From the IMG/VR virus record IMGVR_UViG_3300027573_000779, positions 62,001-126,000 of that record: a DNA stretch of 64,000 nucleotides, one strand, 5' to 3'. Of this stretch, positions 7,520-53,221 are shown in pieces. Each line of letters starts with the position of its first letter. The stretch's first letter is position 1. Both the position numbers and the translations under genes were made by a program. The notes below the pieces were generated by a model. That model had not been told where the DNA came from. It made no database searches and saw only the letters and a list, made by a program, of their open reading frames with translations.

Positions 7520-7536
7520 AGTGTGTAAAATAAGAT

Positions 7537-7737
7537 ATGGCGAGTTTGGATTTTGCATACGACCTGTTAGAACGTTTAAATGATGAAAAGATGAGCTACA
7601 CTCTTGTTGTTCTCCAAAAGGGAAAAAAACGATTTAAAGCAGATATTTTTCATAACGTCCGCGAACCTTTAGTTAAAGAAGCTATGTCAGAAGCCTTAGG
7701 TAAAGCTAAAAAACACGTCAAGTCCAAGACAAAATAA
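7537..7737 (+). CDS. Small hypothetical protein
   Basis: Fills the gap between exonuclease and DnaE; preceded by the GTGTAA motif. Confidence 0.6.
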   Translation: MASLDFAYDLLERLNDEKMSYTLVVLQKGKKRFKADIFHNVREPLVKEAMSEALGKAKKHVKSKTK

Positions 7738-7745
7738 CCCACTTT

Positions 7746-10361
7746 ATGCAAATAAATTCGATTGACGAATTCTTGAAAGAATTCGAACCTCTGGATTTTC
7801 CTAAACTTGGATATATTCGTTTACCTAAATTCGAACTTACAGAAGAGGATAAAAAAGAATATAGCCTTCAAAAAGATATTTCTTCAGAAGACCTATTACA
7901 CCATCTAGTAGAATATTTCTACAAACTTAAAAAAGAAAAAGGTTTAATTCCTCTTGATAAGGAGGACATTTATCGCGCCCGAATCAAGGAGGAAATGGAC
8001 ATTTTTAAAAAACTTTATTTTGTAGATTATATCCTGCTTATTTTCTCAATTCTTAAGTTTTGCCAAAACAAGAATATAATGAACTCTCCTTCTCGTGGTT
8101 CTTGTGGAGGTTCATTAGTTTTATATGTTATTGGGGTTACTTCTTTGGACCCTATTAAACATGGACTGCTTTTTGAGCGTTTCGTCTCTGCGGCTCGAAC
8201 TGAAATTAAGGAGCTTGATGGGAAACTTTATATTGCATCATCGTTTCTTCCTGATGTTGATATTGATTCAGACACCAGTTACAAACCATTAATCAATGAG
8301 TATTTAAACCAAAGGTTTGCGCACAAAACCTGCCGGATGCTGAATCTTAACCACATGAAAAGCAGACTTCTTATTAAAGAAGTTGGAAAAATTGTAGGCG
8401 GCAAAAGCGAAGTAGAAATGAATACTATTTCATCCCTAATTCCAACCTCTTTTGGAATACCAAAGGAGCTTAGTAAAGCTTATGAGGAAATAAAGGAGTT
8501 AAAGGAATGGTGTGATAAAAACAAAGAGAGCTATGAAATTGCGCTTGCTCTTCAGGAATTGATTAAAAACAAATCGGTTCACGCCTCTGGTATTTTTATA
8601 AGTGAAAACAGGCTTGATGAAACCTTACCTACTGAACTTACAAAAGATAAAGAAAAAGTCACTTCTTTTGACATGAAGTCTTGTGAAAAGCTAGGTATTA
8701 AGGTTGATAATTTAGGTCTTAAAAATCTTGCTGCTATTGCGCATTGTTTAAAATTGGTGGGTCAGGAACTTCATACAGTAGACGTAAATCACCCATCAGT
8801 TTATACTTATTTAAACAACAGCACGAATTATCATGGTGTTTTCCAATGTGAAGAAGGCAGCGGAAAAGACATTCTTTATAAAAGCAAACCAAAGAACATT
8901 GATGAAATTGCTGTCGCTATTGCTCTTAACCGGCCCGGATGTATCAAATTTGTAGACCGGTATATTGAGAACAAGCTTAGCGGAAATTATAAGATTGAGC
9001 CACGCGTTAAAGACATTCTTGAGCCGACTTTTGGGGTTATTATTTTTCAGGAACAAATTATAAAACTTTGTATTCGGATGGCTGGTTTTACTCCCCAACA
9101 AGCAGATGGGGTGCGCAAAGCGGTAGGCAAAAAAAACATGGATAAAGTTTTGGAATACAAACCTAAATTTATCGAGGGAGCTTTGAAAAATGAGTTTGCC
9201 AAAGAACTAACTGAAGAAATTTGGCAGGTTTTTGAAGATAGCGGCAACTATCTTTTTAACGCCAGTCATGCGGTTGGTTATGCTTATTTAACAGCTATAA
9301 CGGCCTATCTTAAAGCTAATTATCCAAAAGAATTCTTTTTATCTCTATTTATTCATTCTGAAAATGAACAATCTCAAATAGAAGAGATTTCAAAAATTTA
9401 CAGCGAGCTTAAAGATTTTAATATTAAACTTCTCCCGCCAAACCTATTGAAATCCCAAAGCAGTTTCAGTATCGAAAACGGAAATATAAGATTTGGTCTT
9501 TCGGCTATCAAGGGGAACGGGAAAGAAGCTGTTGAAAAGTTAAATGATTTCAGGAGCGTATATTCCAACAAGTTTGAGTTATTTCAAGCCGCCGAAGAAG
9601 CGGGCCTGTCTAAGGGGATTGTTTGTGCGTTAATCCAAGCTGGCGCTTTATCCGACTCTTTAGACCAAGGCAGAAGCTTGGTGGTTTTAGAAGCTCAACT
9701 TTGGAAGATTTTAAGTGACAGAGAAAAGAAAATAGCGATGCAGCTTGGTCAAAGTTATAATTTTGACCTTTGTTCTATCATCAAACAGATGAAGGTAATG
9801 ACCAATGAAAAAGGCAAACCTTTAATTAAAGAATCAAGGTATGAAACTATAAAAACCGACGCTGACCCATATTTTAAAATTTATAATAAAAACAAACGCA
9901 ACGAACAGTTCGCTAATTGGTTTTATGAAACCTCTCTTTTGGGTTATAGTTATTATAACAGCTTAAAGAATGTTTTTAAAGACCAGTTCCCAACTCTTCA
10001 AAGTATTGAGGAAGTTATAGCAGAAGCTCCCGAAAAGGATGTTTTCTTTACCGGTATTGTTCAGGAAACTGTTAATGCCGTTGCTAAAAACGAGAAAAAG
10101 ACCCGCTATTTTAAAGCTTCTATTAAAGACGAACATAACAAAATTGATGTTCTTTTATTTAACTTTTATATCGATAGATGTAAGGAAGAGAACCTGAAAC
10201 TCCCCGAAGAAGGAAACATCGTAATAGTCGAAGGAACCAAGAAAAAAGACGCTGTATTCGCTGACAAAATTATCATCCAAGATTATAAAATTTATATGAA
10301 GCTAAGTGATATTAAAAAAGACGAAGATAGTAAAAAAACACTTGAGAAAACACCCAATTAA
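7746..10361 (+). CDS. dnaE: DNA polymerase III alpha catalytic core (lacks PHP domain)
   Basis: SRGSCGGSLV, LLFERF, PDVDID, HASG, KVDNLGL, FQEQ, YLFNASHAVGY, IRFGLSAIKG, C-terminal OB fold. Confidence 0.95.
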   Translation: MQINSIDEFLKEFEPLDFPKLGYIRLPKFELTEEDKKEYSLQKDISSEDLLHHLVEYFYKLKKEKGLIPLDKEDIYRARIKEEMDIFKKLYFVDYILLIFSILKFCQNKNIMNSPSRGSCGGSLVLYVIGVTSLDPIKHGLLFERFVSAARTEIKELDGKLYIASSFLPDVDIDSDTSYKPLINEYLNQRFAHKTCRMLNLNHMKSRLLIKEVGKIVGGKSEVEMNTISSLIPTSFGIPKELSKAYEEIKELKEWCDKNKESYEIALALQELIKNKSVHASGIFISENRLDETLPTELTKDKEKVTSFDMKSCEKLGIKVDNLGLKNLAAIAHCLKLVGQELHTVDVNHPSVYTYLNNSTNYHGVFQCEEGSGKDILYKSKPKNIDEIAVAIALNRPGCIKFVDRYIENKLSGNYKIEPRVKDILEPTFGVIIFQEQIIKLCIRMAGFTPQQADGVRKAVGKKNMDKVLEYKPKFIEGALKNEFAKELTEEIWQVFEDSGNYLFNASHAVGYAYLTAITAYLKANYPKEFFLSLFIHSENEQSQIEEISKIYSELKDFNIKLLPPNLLKSQSSFSIENGNIRFGLSAIKGNGKEAVEKLNDFRSVYSNKFELFQAAEEAGLSKGIVCALIQAGALSDSLDQGRSLVVLEAQLWKILSDREKKIAMQLGQSYNFDLCSIIKQMKVMTNEKGKPLIKESRYETIKTDADPYFKIYNKNKRNEQFANWFYETSLLGYSYYNSLKNVFKDQFPTLQSIEEVIAEAPEKDVFFTGIVQETVNAVAKNEKKTRYFKASIKDEHNKIDVLLFNFYIDRCKEENLKLPEEGNIVIVEGTKKKDAVFADKIIIQDYKIYMKLSDIKKDEDSKKTLEKTPN

Positions 10362-10370
10362 AATTACAAT
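10342..10370 (+). promoter_or_regulatory. Candidate sigma-70-type promoter
   Basis: TTGAGA-N17-TACAAT, 11 nt before ATG 10382. Confidence 0.55.
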
Positions 10371-19172: not shown

Positions 19173-19197
19173 CCTTTTTCCTTTAAAATTTTACACA

Positions 19198-20049: not shown

Positions 20050-20057
20050 ATATTAAT

Positions 20058-20088
20058 TTACACGCCAATAGCGTTCCAAATTGTGTAA
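20058..20088. promoter_or_regulatory. Back-to-back GTGTAA motifs (candidate divergent late promoters)
   Basis: TTACAC at 20058-20063 (minus strand) and TGTGTAA at 20082-20088 (plus strand) in the 60-nt gap between divergent operons. Confidence 0.65.
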
Positions 20089-20109
20089 AATATTAAGAAG
20101 GTAAAAGGT

Positions 20110-20643: not shown

Positions 20644-21662
20644 TGTTAAAATCTGAAGCAAGAGAAAGTATTAAGAAACTAAATGCGGATTTAATGTCTT
20701 TAAATCCAAGCGCTCTCATTACTATGTTTGAAATTGATGTTACCGATATAGCTTTTGATTTGGGTATTGATGTAGGAGAAAATACGGTTTTTAGGTTTCA
20801 CAATGTTCCTTCTCTTTTTAGTACTGATATTTTTTGGAAAGGAATAAGATATAGTCCCGCGCCCGTCAGAGCAGAAGGATTTGAACTAAACGCTAAAGGT
20901 ATTGTTGCCGCTCCAAAATTAAGTATTTCTTCAAATGAGGAGGGAATTGTTGCTTTGGCGACTTTGAAATCTTACTTAAGAGATTTAAATGATTTAGTGG
21001 GCGCAAGAGTGACCAGAAGAAGGACTTTAGCTAAATATATTGATGATGTTAATTTTATTCCCAATGAATTTGCGGCTGAAAGACCTTATGGATTTGCTCA
21101 GGATTGGAACGCCGAGTTTCCTCCCGATGTTTATTATATTTATCGAAAATCTAATGAAAATAAGTTTTTATTAGAATATGAATTAGGCTCGCCCATTGAC
21201 GTTCAAGGTATTCAGTTACCCAATCGATTAGTTAGCAAACAAAGATGTTTGTGGCAATATAGAGGAAACGGTTGTTTTTGGGAGAATGTAAACAACTATC
21301 TTGAAAATCCAGAAGTCTTTGAAAACTGTGGTGAATCAGTTTTCCCGCAACATGGTGCTCCCCCAGTAGCCAATACTCAAGACCAACTTATTATAGATTC
21401 TCTTGAAGTTGATGAATTGGTTTATAAAGGTCTTTGGAATTCTCTTACGACTTATGTTAAAGGCGATTATGTTTATTTAAAAAAAGATGGTATTAGTTTT
21501 TATTTTGCTTCTAAACAAAACAGTAACTTAAACCACCCTCCACCAAATAAAGATTACTGGATGGAAGACCAGTGCTCAAAAACTGTTAGAGGGTGTAAAC
21601 TACGCCATGGCACTTCTCTTCCTTATGGCGGATTTTATACCGTCCACAAATATGAAGGATAA
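20643..21662 (+). CDS. Minor tail protein, lambda gpL-like
   Basis: DLVGARVTRRRTLAKYID, CLWQYRGNGC, DQCSK..RGCKLR, LPYGGF. Confidence 0.9.
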   Translation: MLKSEARESIKKLNADLMSLNPSALITMFEIDVTDIAFDLGIDVGENTVFRFHNVPSLFSTDIFWKGIRYSPAPVRAEGFELNAKGIVAAPKLSISSNEEGIVALATLKSYLRDLNDLVGARVTRRRTLAKYIDDVNFIPNEFAAERPYGFAQDWNAEFPPDVYYIYRKSNENKFLLEYELGSPIDVQGIQLPNRLVSKQRCLWQYRGNGCFWENVNNYLENPEVFENCGESVFPQHGAPPVANTQDQLIIDSLEVDELVYKGLWNSLTTYVKGDYVYLKKDGISFYFASKQNSNLNHPPPNKDYWMEDQCSKTVRGCKLRHGTSLPYGGFYTVHKYEG

Positions 21663-30951: not shown

Positions 30952-30987
30952 TACTTTTCTCCCAAAAATTGTGTAAACACTCTTGAT

Positions 30988-31347: not shown

Positions 31348-31370
31348 ATGTGTAATAATAAGGAACTTAT

Positions 31371-35118: not shown

Positions 35119-35148
35119 AGAGGTAGAAGAAATTCTACCTCTTTTTTT
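35119..35148 (+). terminator. Intrinsic terminator
   Basis: AGAGGTAGAA-GAAA-TTCTACCTCT then T run. Confidence 0.9.
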
Positions 35149-35199
35149 GTTCTCTAAATTTAATTGCGTGTGTAACACTTCATAGGAAAAAGGCAATTT

Positions 35200-35535: not shown

Positions 35536-35565
35536 GTGTAATCATTAATGGAGATTTTATAATTT

Positions 35566-37493: not shown

Positions 37494-37544
37494 AGCTTCC
37501 ATAGTTTTCTAGTGTAAAACGTACCAGCTTAACTCAAAGAAAAT

Positions 37545-37572
37545 GGCCAAGAAGCAATTCTTGGCTTTTTTT
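37545..37572 (+). terminator. Intrinsic terminator
   Basis: GGCCAAGAA-GCAA-TTCTTGGCT then T run. Confidence 0.85.
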
Positions 37573-37624
37573 GTGTAATAGATAAAGAGAGGCAATACCA
37601 TGCTCCCCAACAATACAATGAATT

Positions 37625-40706: not shown

Positions 40707-40709
40707 TAA

Positions 40710-41231
40710 ATGGACTTTTATTGGAAAGATGGAATTCCGTTTATATACCAACAGAAAAGCGATTTAGGGCGCTATGTTTATTGGTTTGAAGGCAGTCCTT
40801 TCTTAACCACTCCTTCTACCGGCACTTTAACTCAATACATGTTTCCAATTGCCGATGTTTCAGGCTCTTGGACTCAATCTCCTCTTTATTCTAAAGTTAA
40901 TGAATATTACGCTGATGATTTAAATTATATACAGTCTCAGCCAGTACCGGTTAACAACGGAACTGAACTGTTATTAGGAACGGCGGGGAACATTCCTTCT
41001 TCTTTAACCGGTCATGTTCTAAGATATCGCTACGAAAAAAACATGAATTCGAGCACTGGAATTAATTTAACTATAGGTTTGTATCAAGGAAATACCCTCA
41101 TAAAAGAAGCAACTCACTCCAATCTCCAAAAGGGATGGGTCGATGGAGTGATGACTTTAACAACTGGAGAGGCGGCAACTATAACTAACTATACCAATTT
41201 AAGAGTTAGGTTAATAGCTATTACTGGATAA
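40710..41231 (+). CDS. Hypothetical structural protein
   Basis: C-terminal domain (PLYSKV...ITNYTNLRVRL) is paralogous to the C-terminus of 41233-43443. Confidence 0.55.
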   Translation: MDFYWKDGIPFIYQQKSDLGRYVYWFEGSPFLTTPSTGTLTQYMFPIADVSGSWTQSPLYSKVNEYYADDLNYIQSQPVPVNNGTELLLGTAGNIPSSLTGHVLRYRYEKNMNSSTGINLTIGLYQGNTLIKEATHSNLQKGWVDGVMTLTTGEAATITNYTNLRVRLIAITG

Positions 41232-41232
41232 A

Positions 41233-43443
41233 ATGGCTACACGTTTTTATTTCGAAAATACAAATTTCACTACTTTTTCTCCTCAGTTTAGTGGTTTTTG
41301 GGCTTATACCAGCGAAGCTGGTCGTTATAATCTAGTTGATTATAAATCAAACAACCCGTTAATAACTGGAACAACTATTGGTCCCACATGGAACGGCGCT
41401 GGTCTTGACCGTCAATATATTACAGAACCTTTATCTGCTCAAACCATTAATGGGACAGTTACTGGTCAGTTAATGGTTCGTGAGTACAACCCCGGCGATA
41501 ACGTTAATAGGTTAGTTACTTGTATTAAGGCAATTGATGGAAGCGGCAACTTAAGAGGTAGGGTTTTAACTACTGGTAACTATAGTAATACTACTACAGA
41601 ATTTGTTAATAACGTTAGTCATAGAAATAAAATCATTGCAACAAATACTTCATTAACCAGTGTTGCAATTCAAAGCGGCGACCGTCTTGTTATTGAATTG
41701 GGTTATACAGAAGCAGCAGGAGCAACCCCCGAAGCATCTGCTCTTTGGGGTTCCTTAACTTCTCTTGCTGATTTACCCGCAGATGAAACACAAACAACTT
41801 TAGGTATACCTTTTATTGAGTTTAGTATTGATGTAGTTCGCTTAAAAGCTAGAACTCAAAACGGTTTAGCTAAAATCGTCGCTCAAAAAAGGCAAGAGCA
41901 AACAGGTTTAGCCGCAATCATCAATCTAAGAAGTAATAGCCAAACAGGTTTGGCGAGGATTTTTAATACTTTAAGGAACGGTCAAACAGGTATTGCGCGA
42001 ATTTTAAACACTTCACAGCGTTCTCAAACAGGTGTTGCTAGAATTTTACTTTCTAAAAATAATTATCAAACGGGTATCGCTCGAATTTTTAATACTTTAA
42101 GAAATGGACAAACGGGGCGTGCAAGAATTTTAACTTCTTCCCTTCAATACCAGACCGGTGTTGCGAGAATTTTTAATACCGTTAGGTTTAGTATTAGCGG
42201 CAAAGCATCTATTGATACCGATACAACAACAATTCAAAATCACCAAACCGGCAAGGCTAGGATATTTAATACAATTAGAAATTATCAAACCGGCGTTGCG
42301 AGAATTTTTAACACTTTAAGAAACGGCCAGACCGGTGTTGCTAGAATTTTAGTTTCTAAAAATAATTATCAAACGGGCATTGCTAGAATATTTAATACCT
42401 TAAGAAAAGAGCAAACGGGCAAAGGCTTTATCGTCCCCAATCTTACCGCTTCTGTTTCTTGGATTAGGTTTGAATTTCCTGCTGGAAATTCAACAACTAA
42501 CAATCAAACCGGTGTTGCGAGAATTTTTAAAGCTTTACAAAACAGTTTAAATGGTATCGCTAGGATTTTTAAAACCATTCAACAAACTCAAACTGGACGA
42601 GCAAGAATAGTTTTTAGATATACAAATACACAAACCGGTGTTGCTAGAATTAAAGTTACAAGGAAAGAAAGTGGGGGATGGTGGTATTGGGGAAGAGATA
42701 TCCCCGGAGGAAATTACGTGCGTGCTAATAGTTTCCAAGACGCTTTAGAAAAACAACAAGCATTAGCTGATGAAGCGAGCGATATTTATTGGACAACAGA
42801 AAATCCAAACGGAGCTATTGATTTAAGTTATATTTATATTCAAAAATATTATCCACTTTTCCCTATAAACCACCAAGAATATTACGAAATTGAAGTTTAT
42901 AATGACGAAGAAGGCGTTGAGTATCATTATCTTTTTAATTCTGTTAATGATATTTATCCAAGACTTCTTGACATTTACGGAAGCCATTGGTTATTTGCTG
43001 GAGCTTTCTTTCCTGTCCAATACGGTAAAGCGAGCATTAGAAGTCCTTTTAAAGCTTATCCAATCCAAGACATAAATAGCGGGACTTGGAACACAACCCC
43101 TCTTTATAGTAAAATTTGGGAAGAAACGCCCGTTACTAATGATTATATTATATGTTCCCAAAATCCAAACAACGACACTTGTGAAATGCTTTTAAGTCCT
43201 TTAATGTCAGGTCATTACAGTTCTTTAAAATTAAACTATGTATACAAAAAACAAGAAACTAACTTTTATCAAATTAATTTAACAGTTCAGCTTTTTGAGG
43301 GGGCTGTTAAAAAACACGAAACAATATTACCTTTAATTTCTGGTTTGTGGACAACAGGAAGTGTTTCTTTAACCGCTCACGAAATCAAAAGTATAACAAA
43401 TTTCTCTGATTTAAGAGTAAAGTTTGTAGCAAATAGAGTATAG
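41233..43443 (+). CDS. Fibre-like protein with 14-aa QTGxARI repeats
   Basis: About 19 repeats between globular N- and C-terminal domains. Confidence 0.65.
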   Translation: MATRFYFENTNFTTFSPQFSGFWAYTSEAGRYNLVDYKSNNPLITGTTIGPTWNGAGLDRQYITEPLSAQTINGTVTGQLMVREYNPGDNVNRLVTCIKAIDGSGNLRGRVLTTGNYSNTTTEFVNNVSHRNKIIATNTSLTSVAIQSGDRLVIELGYTEAAGATPEASALWGSLTSLADLPADETQTTLGIPFIEFSIDVVRLKARTQNGLAKIVAQKRQEQTGLAAIINLRSNSQTGLARIFNTLRNGQTGIARILNTSQRSQTGVARILLSKNNYQTGIARIFNTLRNGQTGRARILTSSLQYQTGVARIFNTVRFSISGKASIDTDTTTIQNHQTGKARIFNTIRNYQTGVARIFNTLRNGQTGVARILVSKNNYQTGIARIFNTLRKEQTGKGFIVPNLTASVSWIRFEFPAGNSTTNNQTGVARIFKALQNSLNGIARIFKTIQQTQTGRARIVFRYTNTQTGVARIKVTRKESGGWWYWGRDIPGGNYVRANSFQDALEKQQALADEASDIYWTTENPNGAIDLSYIYIQKYYPLFPINHQEYYEIEVYNDEEGVEYHYLFNSVNDIYPRLLDIYGSHWLFAGAFFPVQYGKASIRSPFKAYPIQDINSGTWNTTPLYSKIWEETPVTNDYIICSQNPNNDTCEMLLSPLMSGHYSSLKLNYVYKKQETNFYQINLTVQLFEGAVKKHETILPLISGLWTTGSVSLTAHEIKSITNFSDLRVKFVANRV
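41851..42660 (+). repeat. Coding tandem repeat, 42-nt / 14-aa period
   Basis: For example QTGLARIFNTLRNG QTGIARILNTSQRS QTGVARILLSKNNY. Confidence 0.9.
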
Positions 43444-43446
43444 TAT

Positions 43447-46400
43447 ATGTCAACCAGATTATATTTAAATTGGAACGAATCGGGGTATAATGCATCCCTA
43501 AGTAAATATTACTCTGGATGGCAATCCGGCTCAAGTAGATTTTCAGTATATGGTTTGGTGCAAAAAGAAGGTATTACAGACAGATATGCTCCCAATCATT
43601 TAGACTTTCCTATAACTACCGGATTTATTCCGTTTGCTATGTCGAAAGCTCTCTCCGAACCCTTAGTTTCGGGAGTTTATAATACTGGATTGTTTTCTGG
43701 AATATCTACTTATTTATGTGGAAAAACCGGGACTTTTGCTATTCAGGTTGGTATTTATAATTTCGATGGGAGTCAGTTAAAAAGCGAAATTTTTCCTGTA
43801 ACAACCGGAAGAAACATAGTTATAACAGATTCTGTTCAAGGAAAATATCTTACAGATATTTTCCCAAACACAGGTTTGCATTCTGGTTTTACGGCAGATA
43901 GAGGAGATAGACTTGGAATAGTCTATGGTTTTTATAATAGAACTAATAGTACTAGTAATTTTCATTTTGAATCAGCCGCAACTACAAACATTGGAGATTT
44001 TTCATTTAGCGAAACCCCCGCAGAAGTATTCGATTTACCACAGTTAGGTACTTTTAAAAATCCTTGGATTGAATTTTCTAATAATTTTCAATTTGTTAAA
44101 ATAAAAAACATACAAGGAAAAGCGGCTATTAGCAGAGGAGCTAGGGATATAAGAGGAACTGCTAGAATTGCTACTCCTCCTTATTATTATGAAAATACCA
44201 CTCCGATAATATTGCCATATTACGGAGGAGGTTCGACCTATCCTTCAACAATTAATGTCACTGGTTTGGATTCAAGTAAAACTTCAGTGACCGTTTGGAT
44301 TAATGGATTTGCTTATACTAATCCTAGAAACGTAGAAATATTGTTGGTTTCTCCTAGTGGAAGAAATATTGTTTTGATGGGTGACAATTCACCGTCAACA
44401 ACTTCAGTTAGCGGTTTAAATTTAACTTTTAACCAAAGTTCTCCTCATATAATGGGAGCTAGTAAGAGGTTATCTGGCGTATCTTATCTCCCTACACTTA
44501 ATAATGAGTCTCGATTTTTCCCTCCTGCTTATTCTGGTATTATTGACAATACAATAGCTAATTCAAATTTGAATGTTGTTTCTGGAGACGACCCCAATGG
44601 AACTTGGTCGTTGTATGTTCTAACCCAAGACGCAAGAATTGGAGGAATTAAATCTTGGGGGCTTTCTTTTGCTAACAATGCAGCTCAAGTTGCTCATTTT
44701 TCATTAAGTGGAAGTTTTGGCCCATTAACCGTTCCAGAAACACAAAGCGGCAGAGCAAGAATTAAAGTTACTAGAACTCCAACTACAAATTGGATGTATA
44801 GTATAAAGACAGGAGGGGGCGACCCTGAAATTACTGATTTTGTTTCTGGATATTCATTCGGAGAAGCTATTTTAAAATCAACGGGAACTTATGAATATAT
44901 CTATCCATATGCTATTGTAGGAGACTTTCTCCAATCTTTTAGTGGTGTTGGTGGCAATAGAAATCATATAGAATTTTACTTTTCTGACCCAGAATGGGGG
45001 TCAGCGGTTTATTTAAGGAACGAACAACCCATTTTCCCCACTAACGATGGTCTGTTTTGGAGCAATGGTAATCAAGCCTACGAAATAACAGCGGGAGCAT
45101 TACACAATTCTGGTATTTGGGAATTACAACGACTTCTTTTTCCGGCGCAAATTGGTTTAGCTAAAATTATCAAATTAAACGTTAATAACCAAACCGCAGT
45201 TGCTAGGATTTTTAATACGGTTAGATGGTCTATTAACGGTGTAGCGCGAATTGCTGGCGCGGGAGCACAATCTTACGACCAATTAGGCAAAGCTAGAATA
45301 AGCACTACCACACAAAGAACTCAAACTGGTTTAGCGCGAATTTTAACCACCAGCCAAAGAACACAAACCGGCATTGCTCGAATTCTTAATACCAGCCGTT
45401 GGTCTCAAACCTGCATTTCTAGAATTAAGGTTACTACAACTCAAACTCAAAGTTGTAGGGCTAGAATTCAGGTTACAACTCGCAATAGTCAAACAGGTCT
45501 TGCTAGAATTAAGGCTACAAGTTCTCGCGTTCAAACAGGGTTGGCACGAATTTTAAACACTACACGAAATACCCAAACCGGTTTATCTAGGATTAAAACT
45601 ACAAGTAATTGGAGCCAAACTTGTAAAGGTAGAATTAAAGTTTCTACTTCCAATATTCAAACTGGCGTTGCTAGAATCAGAGTTTCAACAAATAGAACTC
45701 AAACCGCTTTAGCTAGGATTTTAAATACAAGCAGAACAAGTCAAACTGGTCGCGCAAGAATTCGGACAACAACACAGAATAGCCAAACTGGGGTTGCGAG
45801 GATTAAAGCCGCAACCAGTCGCTCTCAAACCGGTTTAGCAAGAATTTTAAATACTTCTAGATTTACTCAAACTGGCGTTGCTAGGATTAAAAATACAATT
45901 TCATGGACCCATACTGGCGTTGCTTACATTGCTGCTCTTGGAAGTCAGATTAGAGTTCAACTTGGTAAAGCTCGCATACTTAATACTGTTAGATATAGTC
46001 AAACTGGCAAGGCTAATATTAAACATATTAGGAGCTACACGCAAACTGGTATTGCTAGAATTCGCTGCACAATAAATAGAACTAATTCTGGTTTGGCGCG
46101 AATCAAAGCTTCAATATCTCAAAGTCAACTTTGCGTTGCTAGAATTAAGACTACAAGTTCTTTTAGCTGCCAAGGCAAGGCAAGAATTCAAAGAGCTTCT
46201 CAATGGACCGTTAACGGCCTAGCTAGGGTTAAAGTAACCGACAATAATTCTCAAACTGGCGTTGCAAGAATCAAGGCTACAACTCAGAATTCTACTCAAG
46301 GTAAAGGAAGAGTTCTCCGCACAATTCAGCAATCTCAAACTGGTAAGGGTTATATTACTGTATCGGCGGCTTCGAACCGGACCCAAACAGGTATTGCTAG

Positions 46401-46911
46401 AATTCTAAGAAGTTCAACTCAAAATCAGCTTTGTGTTGCTAGGATTAAAACTACTCAAAATAACAATGTTAATTGTGTAGCCCGAATTAAAACTACAAGT
46501 AGTAGAATAATTACTTGTATTTCAAGAATCTCTAAGTCTAGCACCCAAAATCAAACCGGTGTTGCTAGAATCAGAACTAGCACCAGAAATAGTATTTCTT
46601 GCTTAGCTAGAATCAAAACCACTACTTTAAACTCAACAACAGGTAAAGGTAGGATTCAAACTACTTCTAGACATAGCAATACTGGATTAGCAAAAATTAG
46701 AGTTTTAAAGACCCAAACTCTTACGGGTATAGCTAGAATTTTCGGAACTCAAAGAAGAACGACAACCGGTTTAGCTTTTATATTCCCTTATAGTATTACA
46801 GAATTACCTAAAAAGGAAATTATTGCTACTATTTTGGGTCAAAAAGTGACGGGTCCTCAAGGTGTCAGAATTGGACTAATTATCAAGGAGGTTATTGTTA
46901 GGGTTCCATAG
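43447..46911 (+). CDS. Fibre-like protein with proprotein-convertase P-domain and QTGxARI repeats
   Basis: YPSTINVTG...ILLVSPSG...NGTWSLYV...IKSWGLSF (P-domain); roughly 40 repeats. Confidence 0.7.
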   Translation: MSTRLYLNWNESGYNASLSKYYSGWQSGSSRFSVYGLVQKEGITDRYAPNHLDFPITTGFIPFAMSKALSEPLVSGVYNTGLFSGISTYLCGKTGTFAIQVGIYNFDGSQLKSEIFPVTTGRNIVITDSVQGKYLTDIFPNTGLHSGFTADRGDRLGIVYGFYNRTNSTSNFHFESAATTNIGDFSFSETPAEVFDLPQLGTFKNPWIEFSNNFQFVKIKNIQGKAAISRGARDIRGTARIATPPYYYENTTPIILPYYGGGSTYPSTINVTGLDSSKTSVTVWINGFAYTNPRNVEILLVSPSGRNIVLMGDNSPSTTSVSGLNLTFNQSSPHIMGASKRLSGVSYLPTLNNESRFFPPAYSGIIDNTIANSNLNVVSGDDPNGTWSLYVLTQDARIGGIKSWGLSFANNAAQVAHFSLSGSFGPLTVPETQSGRARIKVTRTPTTNWMYSIKTGGGDPEITDFVSGYSFGEAILKSTGTYEYIYPYAIVGDFLQSFSGVGGNRNHIEFYFSDPEWGSAVYLRNEQPIFPTNDGLFWSNGNQAYEITAGALHNSGIWELQRLLFPAQIGLAKIIKLNVNNQTAVARIFNTVRWSINGVARIAGAGAQSYDQLGKARISTTTQRTQTGLARILTTSQRTQTGIARILNTSRWSQTCISRIKVTTTQTQSCRARIQVTTRNSQTGLARIKATSSRVQTGLARILNTTRNTQTGLSRIKTTSNWSQTCKGRIKVSTSNIQTGVARIRVSTNRTQTALARILNTSRTSQTGRARIRTTTQNSQTGVARIKAATSRSQTGLARILNTSRFTQTGVARIKNTISWTHTGVAYIAALGSQIRVQLGKARILNTVRYSQTGKANIKHIRSYTQTGIARIRCTINRTNSGLARIKASISQSQLCVARIKTTSSFSCQGKARIQRASQWTVNGLARVKVTDNNSQTGVARIKATTQNSTQGKGRVLRTIQQSQTGKGYITVSAASNRTQTGIARILRSSTQNQLCVARIKTTQNNNVNCVARIKTTSSRIITCISRISKSSTQNQTGVARIRTSTRNSISCLARIKTTTLNSTTGKGRIQTTSRHSNTGLAKIRVLKTQTLTGIARIFGTQRRTTTGLAFIFPYSITELPKKEIIATILGQKVTGPQGVRIGLIIKEVIVRVP
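45148..46783 (+). repeat. Coding tandem repeat, 42-nt / 14-aa period
   Basis: For example QTGLARILTTSQRT QTGIARILNTSRWS QTCISRIKVTTTQT. Confidence 0.9.
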
Positions 46912-46937
46912 TTAATTTCAGTGTAAAATTAAAAGAT

Positions 46938-47279
46938 ATGGCAGACATTTATGATATTAGTGTAATTCAGGGCGAAAACATCTATTTGAGGGTTGTAGCT
47001 CTAGATGTTAACCAAAACCCTATTGATTTAACTAACTACACAGTGTCGGGCTATGCCAAGTACCGTTATACTGATACAGGAATAGTTTTAAACTTAAGAC
47101 CCGCAATTCACAGTAGTTATATAAGTGGCTACATTGATATTAACGTGCCGGAAACCGGGACCGCCCCTCTTCCTGTAATGCAAGGGGTTTATGATATTGA
47201 AATTCACAACCCTTTTACCAGTTATACCACAAAAGTTATAAAAGGTCTTTTTAATGTAGAACCGGAGGCGACAAGATGA
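46938..47279 (+). CDS. Small Ig-like virion protein (BppU N-terminal-like)
   Basis: IQGE...PIDLTNYTV...GVYDIEI...KGLFNVEPEATR. Confidence 0.6.
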   Translation: MADIYDISVIQGENIYLRVVALDVNQNPIDLTNYTVSGYAKYRYTDTGIVLNLRPAIHSSYISGYIDINVPETGTAPLPVMQGVYDIEIHNPFTSYTTKVIKGLFNVEPEATR

Positions 47280-47773
47280 AATTAGTAGATATTGTAGATG
47301 CACTATATCGTGAATTGGAAAATCCAACAGATATTTCCATAGCTGCTATCCATTTCTGGATGGAATCAAACTTAGGAAACTTAAATATAGCTGTAAACAC
47401 CGATTATAGCTTTAATACCTCCACAAGACAAATAAACGATAATGGCGGGAATGAGATATCAAATTTAGAAGATATTGCTATTTATAAACAACTTTATAAA
47501 GTTCATCGTGCTAAAGTCTTGGTTAGGCGTCATTTGGGAGCAGCAAGCACCGAAAGTATTATTCAAATTGATTCAGACGGTAGCTCAATTCGAAAGGTGA
47601 ATAAAACAACTTTAGCCGCCGAATACCGCCAACTTCTAAAAAATGAAGAGGATACATTAGACAATTTGGTTAAAAATTATGGTCATAATAGTACTCTACC
47701 TCTGCAAGTGGTTGGAGATGATACGGTTGCGGCTTATGAAGACGTTTTAGACCCCAATCCAAGAATAAGATAA
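47276..47773 (+). CDS. Putative head-tail adaptor
   Basis: Helical protein at the start of the neck gene block; positional inference. Confidence 0.45.
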   Translation: MKLVDIVDALYRELENPTDISIAAIHFWMESNLGNLNIAVNTDYSFNTSTRQINDNGGNEISNLEDIAIYKQLYKVHRAKVLVRRHLGAASTESIIQIDSDGSSIRKVNKTTLAAEYRQLLKNEEDTLDNLVKNYGHNSTLPLQVVGDDTVAAYEDVLDPNPRIR

Positions 47774-47774
47774 A

Positions 47775-48209
47775 ATGGCAGATTTGGTTTCAACGGCAGA
47801 CAGAACAGCGTTTATTAGTGGTTTAATTAATCACTTTGATACGTTTAAAGCTCCAATTATAGTTCATAAAGAACCTTTGACTCAGGTGGTGAACGAGAAT
47901 CAAAATCCTTTTATGGGATATGGGCCAATTGAGACTGATGTAACTTATGTTCCAGTTAGCGGCACTTTTTACGCAATAAAAGTTACTCATGATAGTATAA
48001 ACAATAATAATCTACCAATTATTAACACTCAACTGCCAACCAACACTATAAGAGTTAAGGTCTCTGGAGACGCAAAAAACTACATTTCTCAAGGCAAAAC
48101 AACAGCAATTACTTTCTTGGGCGAAATGTATAATCAAATCAGCGTCCCAATGCCCAAAAACTTTCTTGGATTTATTTTTTATTATTACGATTTAACTAAA
48201 GTTGAATAA
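47775..48209 (+). CDS. Putative head closure/stopper protein
   Basis: Size and position in neck block. Confidence 0.4.
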   Translation: MADLVSTADRTAFISGLINHFDTFKAPIIVHKEPLTQVVNENQNPFMGYGPIETDVTYVPVSGTFYAIKVTHDSINNNNLPIINTQLPTNTIRVKVSGDAKNYISQGKTTAITFLGEMYNQISVPMPKNFLGFIFYYYDLTKVE

Positions 48210-48211
48210 AC

Positions 48212-48835
48212 ATGGCAAAATATACAACAATCAACATTAATGTCTTAAATAAAGCAATTCAAAAAACTGCTAAATCTAGGACTAATTTTATGTTTAACGC
48301 TGCTAGAACAAAATTTGTGGCCGCTAAACAGAATATGTTGCGTGAGTTTGATGAGCATCCCGTTACTCAAGAATTGAAAGCTGGTCCTGAAGCAGAAGGA
48401 AACCCAAGTGGCACTTTAGGTGGACGCGCCAATCTTTATGCTTTTATTGGTTTTCCTGCCGAAACAGAACCAACAGAGATTATAAGAAGTGCCTTAGAAA
48501 GCTTTGTTAATATCTTAAATAACCCTACAATAACCTTTGGTTACAGGTCCGCGACATTTAGTTTTTCTGTCGTATATCCTTCTTTAACAGAGATTTATAA
48601 AGCGACCCCTTCACCTTTTAGTAGCAAAAGTTGGGTTAAAGGGATTGAAGATGGCATGTGGGGATTAACTCATTATTTAAATGGACTATATACAAACCCT
48701 CCAAAAGACTTTAGTGATTGGTCTAGGTCGGGACCTGCTATTGAATCTAAGTCCCAAGTAAGAGCAGATTCGTTTGAAGCTCGCCCTTATATGAAAGAAA
48801 TTCTTGAACATTTTGTAGCAAGAGTCAGCACATGA
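48212..48835 (+). CDS. Putative neck/tail completion protein
   Basis: Position; C-terminal ARPYM motif typical of HK97 gp10-like proteins. Confidence 0.45.
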   Translation: MAKYTTININVLNKAIQKTAKSRTNFMFNAARTKFVAAKQNMLREFDEHPVTQELKAGPEAEGNPSGTLGGRANLYAFIGFPAETEPTEIIRSALESFVNILNNPTITFGYRSATFSFSVVYPSLTEIYKATPSPFSSKSWVKGIEDGMWGLTHYLNGLYTNPPKDFSDWSRSGPAIESKSQVRADSFEARPYMKEILEHFVARVST

Positions 48836-49686
48836 GACCTCAATATGCCAATAGATTAATTTCAAGTTTTAACCTCTGGTTTAATAATACTCTTTTGAGG
48901 GAGGGGCAGGCTTATCAAACCACAACCTCTATCTTTTACCCAATTGGACAGGTTTACTATGGACTTTATACCTATGCAACTCCTTACAATCAATTCGTTT
49001 CAGATTATTCAGTAACGGGCGCGACGATTATCACTGGGGTTTATTTAAACGGAACCTTTGTTTCAACTGGCGTAAGTGGTTTAAAGGCAATAGATTACGA
49101 AAACGGCAGGGTTCATTTTACTGGCCAATTACCCTCAACCATTAGAGTTAGCGGCACTTTTTCCTTTAAAGAATTTAATGTTCAAATAACCGAAGAACAA
49201 GAAGAAAAGCTCCTTTTTGAAACAAAGTATAGCCCGCGTCCAAAACTAGGACAAGCTCCAACAGGTTTATGGGCAAGCACTTGGACCTATCCTATTATCT
49301 TTTTAAAGAACGTTGCAAGCGACAATAAACCGTTTGCTTTTGGAGGACAAGATGACTCAATTTATCAAATTTCCGCAATGATACTAGCTGACAGCCAATT
49401 TAACTTAGATGCTTTAAGCTCATTATTTGTGGATAAAACAAGAACAATATTAGGAATGTTAAATGAAAACGAATATCCGTACAATGTCTATGGTAGTTTT
49501 AAAACAGGACTATATAACTATACTGGCCTTGTTGCTAATAAAGATTATTCTTTTATAAATGATATCCATATATCTAAGTTCCAACCCAGTATTTATAGTC
49601 AGATGAAATTAGTGAATCCCGGCATTCATTTTGGTGTAATTGATTTTGAGATTAGTAAGGTAAGATATCCTAGACTAGGAACTTAA
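48832..49686 (+). CDS. Putative tail terminator protein
   Basis: Immediately before the tail tube gene; YPIIFL...PFAFGG. Confidence 0.45.
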   Translation: MRPQYANRLISSFNLWFNNTLLREGQAYQTTTSIFYPIGQVYYGLYTYATPYNQFVSDYSVTGATIITGVYLNGTFVSTGVSGLKAIDYENGRVHFTGQLPSTIRVSGTFSFKEFNVQITEEQEEKLLFETKYSPRPKLGQAPTGLWASTWTYPIIFLKNVASDNKPFAFGGQDDSIYQISAMILADSQFNLDALSSLFVDKTRTILGMLNENEYPYNVYGSFKTGLYNYTGLVANKDYSFINDIHISKFQPSIYSQMKLVNPGIHFGVIDFEISKVRYPRLGT

Positions 49687-49746
49687 AATTACTGTTCTCA
49701 TATTAATAAAACAGTTGTAATTAAACTTAGAAAACAGGACTAATTT

Positions 49747-50853
49747 ATGGCAAGAAACAGAGTTATTTATCAATCAGAGGGTGTATTTGCTGGTCAAAGA
49801 ACCCCTTGCACCGGTGTTAATCATACTGGCGCGGCTGATGTAAAAGAAATTTATCGTGTCCAAAGCGCGAATTATTCATTCAACCTTGGAAAACGAGACG
49901 TTAATCAATTTGGTGAACTCGCCGCAATCGATAGGATTCTAGTTGACCCTCCTACCGTTTCGCTCGATTTTACCTATTTGCTGGCCAATGTCTATAATGA
50001 ACAGGCATTGGGAATGACAGTTGGGATAAGCACTAATCCTACATCTAATGCTTTTTCAGGCATTTTTGCGGGTGCCACCGACGAAAAAGCTTACTGGGTT
50101 AAGACGGTTGCCTATGGTACTGACCTTCACGGTCTACCGTCTACTGGTTATGTTTTCGGCGCAATTGGTTTTGGTAACGGGTATATTAGCTCGTACAGTA
50201 TTGACGCTGCCGTAGGAGATTTCCCAAGAGCGAGCGTTCGTGTTGACTGCTCAAACATGAAGTTTGACAACTGGCTCAGCACCGACGAAGCAAAACAAAG
50301 CCCTTGTGTTAATAAAGAAAATGGAACACTCATTGCCGCAGATACTTATAGACTTCCTTCTGGAACGTCTACAACTTCTGCCCTTGACCAAACCACCGTT
50401 CTTCGTCCCGGTGACGTAGTTATGACTTGGGATAATGCCGCTGCGGCCACTATGGGCACGGCTATTAACGATGCCAAAATTCAAAGTTTCACTTTGTCTA
50501 GTGATATTTCTAAGACTCCGTTGAATAAGCTTGGAAGCAAGTTTGCATATTCGCAAGAAACCAACTTCCCAGTTACTGCCAGCCTTCGAATTACTGCTGC
50601 TGTGGGTGATATGAACACCGGTTCTCTTACCCAACTTCTGGAATCTACTGGAGTTAATACTGTGGGTGTCAAAATTTTTGCTCCTACGGGTTCTACCGTT
50701 AACTTCGGCTTTGACCTTAAGGGTGCTCAGCTTGATAGCCAAGAATATAGCTCCAGTATCGGTGATAGCAAAACTGTAACTATGAACTTCAGTGTTCCTA
50801 TTGCAGGCGCTAACGACCTTACTCGTGGTATTTTCCTAAGCGGAAGAGTCTAA
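49747..50853 (+). CDS. Major tail tube protein
   Basis: RVQSANYSF...DVNQFGEL; precedes chaperones and tape measure; followed by a strong terminator. Confidence 0.75.
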   Translation: MARNRVIYQSEGVFAGQRTPCTGVNHTGAADVKEIYRVQSANYSFNLGKRDVNQFGELAAIDRILVDPPTVSLDFTYLLANVYNEQALGMTVGISTNPTSNAFSGIFAGATDEKAYWVKTVAYGTDLHGLPSTGYVFGAIGFGNGYISSYSIDAAVGDFPRASVRVDCSNMKFDNWLSTDEAKQSPCVNKENGTLIAADTYRLPSGTSTTSALDQTTVLRPGDVVMTWDNAAAATMGTAINDAKIQSFTLSSDISKTPLNKLGSKFAYSQETNFPVTASLRITAAVGDMNTGSLTQLLESTGVNTVGVKIFAPTGSTVNFGFDLKGAQLDSQEYSSSIGDSKTVTMNFSVPIAGANDLTRGIFLSGRV

Positions 50854-50874
50854 TCCTGTTGTAAAATAAACTAG

Positions 50875-50907
50875 ATAAGCCCGAAGAAATTCGGGCTTAT
50901 TTTTTTT
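50875..50907 (+). terminator. Intrinsic terminator
   Basis: ATAAGCCCGAA-GAAA-TTCGGGCTTAT then T run. Confidence 0.92.
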
Positions 50908-50966
50908 GTTCTTTTTTTGGGAAACCTTGTGTAAAGATTAGTAGGTAAAAGGTCAGTTCCAAGGTT

Positions 50967-52151: not shown

Positions 52152-52172
52152 AAATAAACTAACGTCCTGTTC

Positions 52173-52201
52173 GGCCCTTACCTAAAGTAGGGGCTTTTTT
52201 T
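52173..52201 (+). terminator. Intrinsic terminator
   Basis: GGCCCTTAC-CTAAA-GTAGGGGCT then T run. Confidence 0.8.
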
Positions 52202-52204
52202 GTA

Positions 52205-53221
52205 GTGAATAAACTAGATGAAATTAAACATAAAATTGCTCTTGCTGATATTTTAGTAGGTTATTCCACAGTAATATTTAATAATCAAACCATCTATATC
52301 AAACATTTTACCTTTCAAGAACACCTAAAAGTTGAACAAGAATATGAAACAAGCTTTGAAATAGCTGTTAAAAAGGGCGTTCCAACCATTGAAGACAAAA
52401 TAAAAGAACTTATTAAAGAAAAAGAGTGGACCGACGAAGAAGAAAAACAGTTCCAAAAACTTCCTCAAGATATAGGTATTTTAAAAGATACCAAGAAAAA
52501 ATTCTTCTTGGAAAAAGACGTGGAAAGAATTGATAAAAATATTAAGGCTGAAGAGGAGAAATTGCAAAAATTGGAGACTAAAAGAAACAGCCTATTAGGT
52601 TACACCGCAGAAACTTACGCAACAAAAAAAACTAACGAACTGTTTGTTTTTCATACCTTTAGAAATCAATTAGAACTAGATAAAACTTTATATTCTTGGG
52701 AAGAGTTTAATGAGTTGGATGAAAGTCAAATGGGCGATTTAATTAATCTTTTTAATAAAGATTGCGTTAGATTTGCCCCTCAAGAGATGAAAAAAACAGC
52801 TATTTTAAACTCTCACATGCAAATGATTTATTTGGCGGGAGAAGATTTGTGGAACTTTTATGGTAAGCCGGTAGTTCAATTTACCGCCCGTCAAAGCGAG
52901 CTTTATAGCCTAGGACGTTATTTTAAAGGACTTATTTCGGACTTAAAAGATAAGGTCACTAGCGATGTTTTAGACGACCCGGATAAACTAATTCAATATG
53001 TAGACTCTCAAAAAGCCGCTGAAACCCTTGGAACCGCCAAAATTCCTGAAGGAAAAGAATCAATTGGAGGAGGAACGGCTATTGTGGGAGCTTCCACTGA
53101 AGATTTAAAGAAATTAGGCTTAGATAAAGAAAAGGGCGCTGATAGTTTGGCTGAAGAAGCTGGAAAGAAAGGCGGCTCTTTAAATATGGAAGATTTATTA
53201 AAATTACACGGTTTGGTGTAA
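52205..53221 (+). CDS. Putative tail assembly chaperone (gpT-like)
   Basis: Directly before tape measure; FYGKPVVQFT..Q..L and DDPDKL motifs. Confidence 0.55.
   Translation: MNKLDEIKHKIALADILVGYSTVIFNNQTIYIKHFTFQEHLKVEQEYETSFEIAVKKGVPTIEDKIKELIKEKEWTDEEEKQFQKLPQDIGILKDTKKKFFLEKDVERIDKNIKAEEEKLQKLETKRNSLLGYTAETYATKKTNELFVFHTFRNQLELDKTLYSWEEFNELDESQMGDLINLFNKDCVRFAPQEMKKTAILNSHMQMIYLAGEDLWNFYGKPVVQFTARQSELYSLGRYFKGLISDLKDKVTSDVLDDPDKLIQYVDSQKAAETLGTAKIPEGKESIGGGTAIVGASTEDLKKLGLDKEKGADSLAEEAGKKGGSLNMEDLLKLHGLV

What the first reader, a model, noticed from the sequence alone, without database searches (positions are those of the whole stretch)
7522..53221. Recurrent (T)GTGTAA motif upstream of late genes: candidate phage-specific promoter
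Seen in or at intergenic gaps at 7522, 19191(-), 20058(-), 20082, 30970, 31349, 35169, 35536, 37512, 37572, 46921, 50928 and 53216, with variants at 32715 and 49714. It follows gene orientation, often lies just after a terminator, and has no -35 box. Several copies are only 8-11 nt from the start codon with no Shine-Dalgarno (genes at 7537, 20049, 30988, 46938). Established: T4-type late promoters are a single short box read by a phage sigma factor. Inference: late promoter, some producing leaderless mRNAs.
Basis: partly seen in the sequence, partly recalled or inferred. Interest (0 to 1): 0.62.

Follow-up and report, generated by a model that had tools for sequence, protein, structure and literature searches.

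The report
Phage sigma-type GTGTAA promoter box
A strict six-base box, GTGTAA, marks the middle and late promoters of an uncultured 209-kb marine phage; it is probably read by the phage's own sigma factor and is often placed so that the mRNA begins at the start codon.

Summary
The window's total count is at chance (31 against 31.7 expected). But 13 copies lie in or against the 1,130 nt of intergenic DNA, and all point at a gene start.

Unbiased counting makes GTGTAA the most enriched hexamer upstream of genes in this genome (24 observed, 2.2 expected). The same holds in three relatives with 37-44% GC (22 vs 1.0, 12 vs 0.9, 11 vs 0.4).

- The box is never closer than 8 nt to a start codon, and 8 nt is the commonest distance.
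- The ninth base after the box is a purine in 25 of 25 sites and is usually preceded by T, which looks like a start site.
- There is no -35 element.
- Boxes 13 nt or more from the start codon are followed by a Shine-Dalgarno-like sequence; close boxes are not.

Outside the window the genome has one sigma-70-family gene (233 aa, sigma-2 and sigma-4 domains, a Cys4 insert). It has over 1,000 metagenomic relatives and none in cultured phages.

At one orthologous gene junction, 38 of 40 relatives keep the exact box. No RNA data were available, so start sites and the sigma assignment remain inferred. This is a new member of a known kind.

The parts
7523..7528 (+). GTGTAA box, 8 nt before the ATG at 7537 (66-aa gene, followed by DNA polymerase III alpha at 7746-10361). 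No Shine-Dalgarno sequence; predicted leaderless.
19191..19196 (-). GTGTAA box, 18 nt before the ATG at 19172 (288-aa gene). The leader carries a GGA/AGG Shine-Dalgarno-like sequence.
20058..20063 (-). GTGTAA box, 8 nt before the GTG at 20049 (283-aa gene). It is one half of a back-to-back divergent pair.
   Evidence: the same divergent pair occurs in G001 and G004
20083..20088 (+). GTGTAA box, 21 nt before the ATG at 20110 (minor tail protein, first gene of the lambda-like tail-tip cluster 20110-30256). The leader carries a doubled AAGGT.
21593..21598 (+). GTGTAA box inside the 3' end of gene 20643-21662, 8 nt before the ATG at 21607 (266-aa gene).
30971..30976 (+). GTGTAA box, 11 nt before the ATG at 30988. 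No Shine-Dalgarno sequence.
31350..31355 (+). GTGTAA box, 15 nt before the ATG at 31371. The leader carries AAGGA.
35119..35142 (+). Intrinsic terminator (10-bp stem plus a run of T) ending the preceding operon, 28 nt upstream of the next box.
35170..35175 (+). GTGTAA box, 24 nt before the ATG at 35200. The leader carries a Shine-Dalgarno-like sequence.
35536..35541 (+). GTGTAA box directly after the stop codon of gene 35200-35535, 24 nt before the ATG at 35566.
37512..37517 (+). GTGTAA box followed 27 nt later by a terminator hairpin. It could make a short RNA or act as an attenuated promoter; its function is open.
37545..37566 (+). Intrinsic terminator whose run of T continues straight into the next box.
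37573..37578 (+). GTGTAA box, 46 nt before the ATG at 37625.
46921..46926 (+). GTGTAA box, 11 nt before the ATG at 46938. No Shine-Dalgarno sequence.
50873..50902 (+). Intrinsic terminator (13-bp stem), 26 nt upstream of the next box.
50929..50934 (+). GTGTAA box, 32 nt before the ATG at 50967.
53216..53221 (+). GTGTAA box whose TAA is the stop codon of gene 52205-53221. It lies 21 nt before the ATG at 53243, the start of the 5,468-aa tape measure gene. The leader carries a doubled AAGG.
   Evidence: the orthologous 6,037-aa gene in G004 also has the box

Best explanation
GTGTAA is the core of the phage's own middle and late promoters. It occupies about -14 to -9 relative to the inferred transcription start, which is a purine nine bases after the box.

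Its TAA most likely stands for the first half of a -10 hexamer, and its GTG for an upstream extension. Such a box would need no -35 element, as in extended -10 promoters and T4 late promoters.

It is most likely read by host core RNA polymerase carrying the phage's single sigma-70-family protein. That protein is 233 aa, has sigma-2 and sigma-4 domains and a conserved Cys4 insert, and is encoded at genome 142461-143162, outside the window.

In most relatives the sigma gene is first expressed from an ordinary TATAAT promoter. Sigma then switches on the boxes in front of replication, packaging, head and tail operons.

Where the box lies 8-11 nt from the start codon, the transcript begins at or within 3 nt of the AUG and is translated without a leader. 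Where it lies further away, the leader carries a Shine-Dalgarno-like AAGG or AGGA.

Shown here: the placement, orientation, strictness and conservation of the box, and the existence of the sigma. Inferred: the start site, which protein reads the box, and leaderless translation.
For: Enrichment:
- GTGTAA is the most enriched hexamer in the 40 nt before gene starts in this genome: 24 observed, 2.15 expected.
- The same is true in 79 neighbourhoods of relatives (120 vs 9.7) and in the long relatives G001, G004 and G008 (22 vs 1.03, 12 vs 0.87, 11 vs 0.44).

Orientation and strictness:
- Non-coding copies point at a gene start rather than a gene end 65:6 over three genomes.
- All six bases are needed. 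The exact box gives 69 vs 4.5 expected, and no single-mismatch variant exceeds 2.8x.

Geometry over 61 sites:
- No site lies closer than 8 nt to the start codon, and 13 lie at exactly 8 nt.
- The ninth base after the box is a purine in 25 of 25 sites here, in 42 of 48 sites that are not at 8 nt, and in 85 of 97 distinct sites in relatives. T precedes it.
- Nothing is conserved at -35.

Position equivalent to a -10 element:
- In front of the sigma operon, relatives carry either TATAAT 5-10 nt from the ATG or GTGTAA 8 nt from it. Two genomes carry the two fused.
- Relatives with the most divergent sigma have GTGTATAAT instead.

Conservation: the junction between the large terminase gene and the next gene keeps the exact box in 38 of 40 distinct relatives, while the flanks differ.

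Sigma:
- Pfam Sigma70_r2 scores 25.4 bits against a cut-off of 24. TIGR02937 gives E = 2e-10.
- The top 50 Foldseek matches are all sigma factors.
- The sigma-4 domain aligns at Z 9.3, rmsd 1.9 A over 68 residues. The sigma-2 domain aligns at Z 7.8, rmsd 2.8 A over 80 residues.
- The genome has no paralogue, no T7-like RNA polymerase and no beta subunit.

Class separation: sigma-70-type TTGACA-N16-TATAAT promoters cluster in the small-gene arms (0-40 and 150-200 kb). The boxes cluster at 60-150 kb, in front of tail, tape measure, packaging and replication genes.

Shine-Dalgarno split: 22 of 29 distant boxes have one, against 3 of 32 close boxes.
Against: - No transcript data exist. No RNA run was listed, so no start site has been observed.
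- The pairing of sigma and box rests on co-occurrence, and the relatives were found through the sigma itself, so no sigma-less control genome exists.
- The box carries only about 12 bits. Fifty-two of the genome's 79 copies do not point at a gene start from non-coding DNA, and coding copies are at most mildly depleted. Context must therefore add specificity. The flanks are richer in A and T: 0.81 against 0.65.
- The sigma keeps a sigma-4 domain, yet no -35 element is seen.
- In some relatives the only recognisable signal in front of the sigma operon is the box itself. This leaves open how sigma is first made there.
- Three of the sites at 8 nt have GTG starts, which are poor for leaderless translation.
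- The host is unknown, because the titles of the genome bins that hold homologues disagree.
Confidence: 0.65

Rival explanations
1. The box is a promoter element, but host RNA polymerase reads it with a host sigma factor (primary or alternative). A phage activator might help, for example the conserved zinc-ribbon protein encoded just upstream of the sigma gene. The phage sigma would then serve another gene set.
For: - TAA could be a weak start of a -10 hexamer, and divergent relatives have GTGTATAAT, which contains a perfect host-type -10.
- Some relatives have only the box in front of the sigma operon, so something else must read it first.
- The zinc-ribbon gene is always paired with the sigma gene.
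Against: - The second half of a host -10, especially T at -7, is not conserved.
- The strict GTG has no counterpart in the genome's own TTGACA/TATAAT promoters, which occupy different regions.
- The genome offers no other motif class that the conserved sigma could serve. GTGTAA is the top motif wherever the sigma occurs.
Confidence: 0.2
2. The box acts in RNA rather than DNA, as a processing site, a ribosome-loading signal or a translational operator in front of late genes.
For: It follows gene orientation and lies close to start codons, in some genes at the place a Shine-Dalgarno sequence would occupy.
Against: - The distance to the start codon ranges from 8 to 46 nt, and distant sites carry their own Shine-Dalgarno-like sequence.
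- Three copies lie just downstream of strong terminators, where little RNA should arrive.
- Back-to-back divergent pairs sit in short intergenic gaps.
- The box is interchangeable in position with TATAAT at an orthologous promoter.
- A T-purine pair at a fixed distance is a start-site feature.
Confidence: 0.07
3. The box is a chance or compositional by-product, for example of AT-rich intergenic DNA or of TAA stop codons.
For: The window's total count equals the shuffle expectation. Two copies overlap stop codons, at 53216 and 10946.
Against: - Enrichment upstream of genes is 11- to 25-fold in genomes of 37-44% GC.
- The orientation ratio is 65:6.
- Intergenic copies number 29 against a simulated 6.1 +/- 2.6.
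- No one-mismatch variant is clearly enriched.
- The exact box is kept at an orthologous junction in 38 of 40 relatives.
Confidence: 0.01

Closest known systems
T4-type late promoters (TATAAATA, read by gp55 with gp33 and the sliding clamp gp45). From established knowledge; not tested here.
   Same: A single short box in the -10 region with no -35 element. It is read after the host-type early promoters and stands in front of virion genes.
   Different: - The sequence differs: GTGTAA, not TATAAATA.
- The sigma here has both sigma-2 and sigma-4 domains and a Cys4 insert, whereas gp55 is a truncated sigma.
- The sigma has no detectable similarity to any cultured-phage protein.
- Whether a clamp or a co-activator is needed is unknown.
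- The box also serves replication genes.
phiEco32 / phage 7-11 promoters read by a phage sigma-70-family factor (tAATGTAtA and TGATGT; PMC4331800).
   Same: - A single-element promoter read by a phage-encoded sigma-70-family factor with two domains.
- It drives middle and late genes.
- The sigma gene itself lies behind both a host-type and a phage-type promoter, as in this genome and in L034.
- Both boxes share a TGTA core.
   Different: - The consensus differs.
- There is no sequence match between the sigmas by tblastn against 50,697 phage records.
- This phage is a roughly 209-kb siphovirus-like marine phage.
- The precise 8-nt placement that would give leaderless mRNAs has not been described for those phages, as far as the paper read here shows.
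Extended -10 promoters of sigma-70 (TGnTATAAT). From established knowledge.
   Same: A G/T-containing extension upstream of the -10 makes -35 unnecessary. Divergent relatives carry GTGTATAAT.
   Different: The TG abuts the TA with no spacer base. The downstream half of the hexamer is not conserved, being only rich in A and T. The extra 5' G is invariant.

Membership tests
Sigma-70 family sigma factor (ECF-like, two-domain): the protein proposed to read the box | Sigma-2 domain (region 2) | tested here: met
   - Pfam PF04542 scores 25.4 bits against a cut-off of 24.
- The domain aligns to pro-sigma-K sigma-2 at Z 7.8, rmsd 2.8 A over 80 residues.
- The region 2 sequence is nearly invariant in 19 homologues.
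Sigma-70 family sigma factor (ECF-like, two-domain): the protein proposed to read the box | Sigma-4 helix-turn-helix domain | tested here: met
   - By structure the feature is met. Residues 151-228 align to sigma-H, SigD, SigR and sigma-E region 4 at Z 8.1-9.3 and rmsd 1.8-2.0 A.
- By sequence the match is below threshold: PF08281 scores 13.9 bits.
Sigma-70 family sigma factor (ECF-like, two-domain): the protein proposed to read the box | Score above the curated family cut-off of TIGR02937 (sigma70-ECF) | tested here: inconclusive
   The score is 40.6 bits against a cut-off of 42.9, with E = 2e-10, and the match spans both domains.
Sigma-70 family sigma factor (ECF-like, two-domain): the protein proposed to read the box | Binds core RNA polymerase and directs initiation at a specific promoter | not testable with these tools
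   This needs biochemistry. No RNA runs were listed.
T4-type late promoter system (gp55, gp33, gp45) | A single -10-region box with no -35 element | tested here: met
   The position tables for 25 and 61 sites show no conserved column upstream of the box.
T4-type late promoter system (gp55, gp33, gp45) | Consensus TATAAATA | tested here: not met
   The box is GTGTAA, and all six bases are required.
T4-type late promoter system (gp55, gp33, gp45) | A gp55-like truncated sigma that lacks sigma-4 | tested here: not met
   The sigma has a sigma-4 domain. It has no tblastn match to any phage record, T4-like phages included.
Extended -10 sigma-70 promoter | TG at -15/-14, one spacer base, then TATAAT | tested here: not met
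   TG directly abuts TA. Positions corresponding to -9 to -7 are only rich in A and T, and T at -7 is not conserved.
Leaderless mRNA | No Shine-Dalgarno sequence between the promoter and the start codon | tested here: met
   A Shine-Dalgarno-like 4-mer occurs in 3 of 32 sites with the box 8-12 nt from the start, against 22 of 29 sites at 13 nt or more.
Leaderless mRNA | The transcript's 5' end lies at, or within a few nt of, the start codon | not testable with these tools
   This is inferred only, from the hard 8-nt minimum and the purine at the ninth base. No reads were available.

The most novel reading that the evidence does not exclude
A globally distributed, so far uncultured clade of large marine siphovirus-like phages carries its own family of Cys4-containing sigma factors. 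These factors read a strict GTGTAA box that needs no -35 element. Both the host-type early promoters and the phage-type promoters are set 5-9 nt from start codons. Much of the infection programme would then run on leaderless mRNAs, which would imply a host whose ribosomes handle such mRNAs well.
Probability: 0.45. Interest if true: 0.6.

Novelty: new member of a known kind. Interest (0 to 1): 0.5.

Why it matters
Phage-encoded sigma factors with their own one-box promoters are a classic way of timing gene expression. Very few sigma-promoter pairs are known, and nearly all come from phages of laboratory hosts.

Here a pair can be proposed from sequence alone for a clade seen in more than 1,000 metagenomic protein clusters. 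The six-base box immediately marks the operon starts of the virion and replication modules in those genomes.

The pair is orthogonal in sequence to sigma-70 promoters, so it could serve as a compact expression switch. The exact spacing also suggests that leaderless translation is used systematically, which hints at the unknown host's biology.

Tried and rejected
- **RNA evidence.** The look-up of sequencing runs listed no RNA run.
- **Close phage relatives.** Megablast of 20 kb against 50,697 phage records found nothing. tblastn of the sigma found nothing either.
- **Relatives through a 371-aa protein.** A scan of viral contigs with the protein at 33981-35096 found none. Relatives were reached through the sigma instead.
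- **Host.** The six genome bins that hold a sigma homologue carry discordant titles: Pseudomonadales, Flavobacteriales, Neomarinimicrobiota, Halobacteriovorax, Thiobacillus and Nitrospinales. The host stays unknown.
- **A -35 element.** The position tables and a 5-mer count upstream of 61 sites show nothing beyond A/T richness. The apparent TTACA signal is the reverse-strand box of back-to-back pairs.
- **Variant boxes.** No one-mismatch version is clearly enriched.
- **Avoidance of the box inside genes.** There is modest depletion against a Markov-2 model and none against Markov-4, so this is inconclusive.
- **Other RNA polymerases or sigmas.** The genome has no T7-like RNA polymerase, no beta-subunit domain and no sigma paralogue.
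- **Sigma with its zinc-ribbon neighbour.** Complex prediction gave no verdict, which is evidence neither way.
- **Literature.** No paper in the held library links GTGTAA to a phage promoter. The 'moraphage' lineage of large aquatic phages is a different group, with contractile tails and a family B polymerase.


Full report
**Setting**

The window is bases 62001-126000 of a single 208,933-bp virus record, 37% GC, estimated complete. It encodes:
- a DnaB-like helicase, DNA polymerase III alpha and a lambda-like tail-tip cluster of minor tail proteins and a J-like fibre;
- a 5,468-aa gene with a tape measure domain.

No cultured phage is close to it.

**Observation**

All 13 listed GTGTAA copies are present. 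The window's total of 31 equals the shuffle expectation of 31.7 +/- 5.4. If the question were only whether the word is frequent, the answer would be no.

The signal lies in the placement:
- Only 1,130 nt of the window is intergenic. Thirteen copies lie in or against it, all pointing at the next gene start.
- Over the whole genome, non-coding copies point at a gene start rather than a gene end 27:3.
- Intergenic copies number 29, against 6.1 +/- 2.6 in a Markov-1 simulation.

An unbiased count of all hexamers in the 40 nt before every called gene puts GTGTAA first, with 24 observed and 2.15 expected. TTGACA, the sigma-70 -35 word, is also enriched (18 vs 4.0).

**Anatomy**

- All six bases are required. 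Over four genomes the exact word is seen 69 times against 4.5 expected, and no one-mismatch word exceeds 2.8x.
- Nothing is conserved upstream apart from A/T richness, so there is no -35.
- In 61 sites from three genomes the box is never closer than 8 nt to the start codon. Thirteen sites sit at exactly 8 nt, and the numbers then tail off to 46 nt.
- The ninth base after the box is a purine in 25 of 25 sites of this genome, or 18 of 18 without the 8-nt sites. It is a purine in 42 of 48 non-8-nt sites over three genomes, and in 85 of 97 distinct sites from relatives. T precedes it in about two thirds of sites. A T-purine pair at a fixed distance is what a transcription start looks like.
- Copies upstream of genes differ from the other copies. 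Their flanks are richer in A and T (0.81 vs 0.65), and they carry this purine more often (0.90 vs 0.62).

**Leaders**

The table shows how often a Shine-Dalgarno-like 4-mer occurs at -18 to -3.

| Gene class | Genes with the 4-mer |
|---|---|
| Box 13 nt or more from the start | 22 of 29 |
| Box 8-12 nt from the start | 3 of 32 |
| Genes without the box | 123 of 603 |

This is the split expected if close boxes give leaderless mRNAs and distant boxes give leadered ones.

The host-type promoters of the same genome behave alike. TTGACA-N16-TATAAT matches of 11-12 out of 12 lie mostly 6-9 nt from start codons.

**Which genes carry the box**

- In the window: the operon with DNA polymerase III alpha (7523), two leftward genes (19196, 20063), the tail-tip cluster (20083), several small genes and unassigned large genes of the central module (30971 to 50929), and the tape measure gene (53216).
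- Outside the window: the gene after the large terminase, a 929-aa gene next to a head-decoration homologue, PhoH, a protease homologue, and the sigma operon itself.

Sigma-70-type promoters cluster instead in the small-gene arms at 0-40 and 150-200 kb. Within the window they are at chance. The class is therefore 'middle plus late' rather than strictly late.

Three boxes follow strong intrinsic terminators.

**The sigma factor**

- The genome has one Sigma70_r2 match, in a 233-aa gene at 142461-143162 on the minus strand. It scores 25.4 bits against a cut-off of 24. TIGR02937 gives E = 2e-10, just under its cut-off.
- An AlphaFold model (pLDDT 72) matches only sigma factors in the top 50 Foldseek rows.
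- VIA-align places residues 151-228 on sigma region 4 domains (Z 9.3, rmsd 1.9 A over 68). It places residues 6-88 on a sigma-2 domain (Z 7.8, rmsd 2.8 A over 80).
- Four invariant cysteines lie between the two domains.
- There is no paralogue, no T7-like polymerase and no beta-subunit domain.
- The protein has more than 1,000 cluster-level relatives in metagenomes, many from Tara and JGI marine samples. None carries a cultured-phage name.

**Comparative test**

- In 79 sigma neighbourhoods from viral contigs, with sigma 57-64% identical, GTGTAA is again the top hexamer: 120 vs 9.7, with the distance to the start codon peaking at 8 nt.
- Whole relatives give 22 vs 1.03 (G001, 39% GC) and 12 vs 0.87 (G004, 44% GC). 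A contig whose sigma is only about 43% identical gives 11 vs 0.44.
- Orthologous sites are kept: the divergent pair next to the minor tail gene and the site before the giant tape measure gene.
- At the junction between the large terminase and the next gene, 38 of 40 distinct upstream regions keep the exact box while the flanks differ. The two exceptions, with the most divergent sigmas, read GTGTATAAT.
- In front of the zinc-ribbon and sigma operon, most relatives have TATAAT 5-10 nt from the ATG. A subgroup has GTGTAA 8 nt from it. This genome and L034 have the two fused.

These swaps place the box in the -10 region. They also suggest that its TAA corresponds to the first half of a -10 hexamer, with GTG as an upstream extension.

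**Mechanism proposed**

1. Host holoenzyme transcribes the early arms and, from a TATAAT promoter, the sigma operon.
2. The phage sigma then directs core polymerase to GTGTAA boxes without using a -35 element.
3. Transcription starts at the purine nine bases downstream.
4. Boxes set 8-11 nt from the start codon give leaderless or nearly leaderless mRNAs.

The sequence shows the box's properties and the presence of the sigma.

**Weak points**

- There are no RNA data.
- All relatives were found through the sigma, so no sigma-less control exists.
- The box carries only about 12 bits. Most of the genome's 79 copies lie inside genes, where they are at most mildly depleted.
- The sigma keeps a sigma-4 domain that has no visible target.
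- In some relatives the box is the only signal before the sigma operon.
- The host is unknown.

**Comparison with known systems**

- The system works like T4 late promoters and, more closely, like the single-box promoters of phiEco32 and 7-11, which are read by a phage sigma-70-family factor.
- It is a member of neither family. The consensus differs, the sigma is unrelated by tblastn, and unlike gp55 it has a sigma-4 domain.
- It is not a canonical extended -10, because TG abuts TA and the 3' half of the hexamer is free.

**Verdict**

This is a new member of a known kind: a new phage sigma-promoter pair. Its clade-wide spread and systematic leaderless geometry give it moderate interest.

Noticed in passing
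genome 0-40 kb and 150-200 kb (outside the window); in the window 4808-4844 and 10342-10370: Host-type TTGACA-N16-18-TATAAT promoters lie mostly 6-9 nt from start codons. The early genes therefore also look leaderless. This suggests a host that translates leaderless mRNAs well.
   Followed up: partly
window 53243-64000 (the gene continues to genome 131649): A 5,468-aa gene carries a tape measure domain (PF10145, 93.7 bits, residues 121-307). It also has sub-threshold sigma-70 region 4 and metallopeptidase-like matches. The orthologue in relative G004 is 6,037 aa. If tail length scales with the tape measure, this implies an extremely long tail.
   Followed up: partly
window 37512-37578: A GTGTAA box is followed after 27 nt by a strong terminator hairpin (37545-37566) and then by a second box. 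The first box could make an RNA of about 45 nt or act as an attenuator. The stretch also holds an 11-codon mini-ORF.
   Followed up: no
window 36123-37078: An HNH endonuclease gene (36191-37078) sits between virion genes. It has its own terminator upstream and its own TTGACA-17-TATTTT promoter and no GTGTAA box, which looks like a mobile insertion.
   Followed up: partly
window 20089-20109, 53222-53242, 50935-50966; also G001 and G004: Leaders of the leadered box genes often carry two AAGG(T) copies. The second copy abuts the ATG, which is too close for normal Shine-Dalgarno spacing.
   Followed up: no
genome 143163-143612, minus strand (L001:1753-2202:-): A 149-aa protein with an N-terminal zinc ribbon is encoded directly upstream of the sigma gene in this genome and in nearly all relatives. 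It could be a co-factor or an anti-sigma. The complex prediction gave no verdict.
   Followed up: partly
It occurs nowhere else in the genome, and its meaning is unknown.
   Followed up: partly
window 20050-20109; G001 58299-58363; G004 101967-102032: Back-to-back divergent GTGTAA boxes lie 10-20 nt apart in a short intergenic gap next to the minor tail gene. The arrangement is conserved in three genomes.
   Followed up: partly
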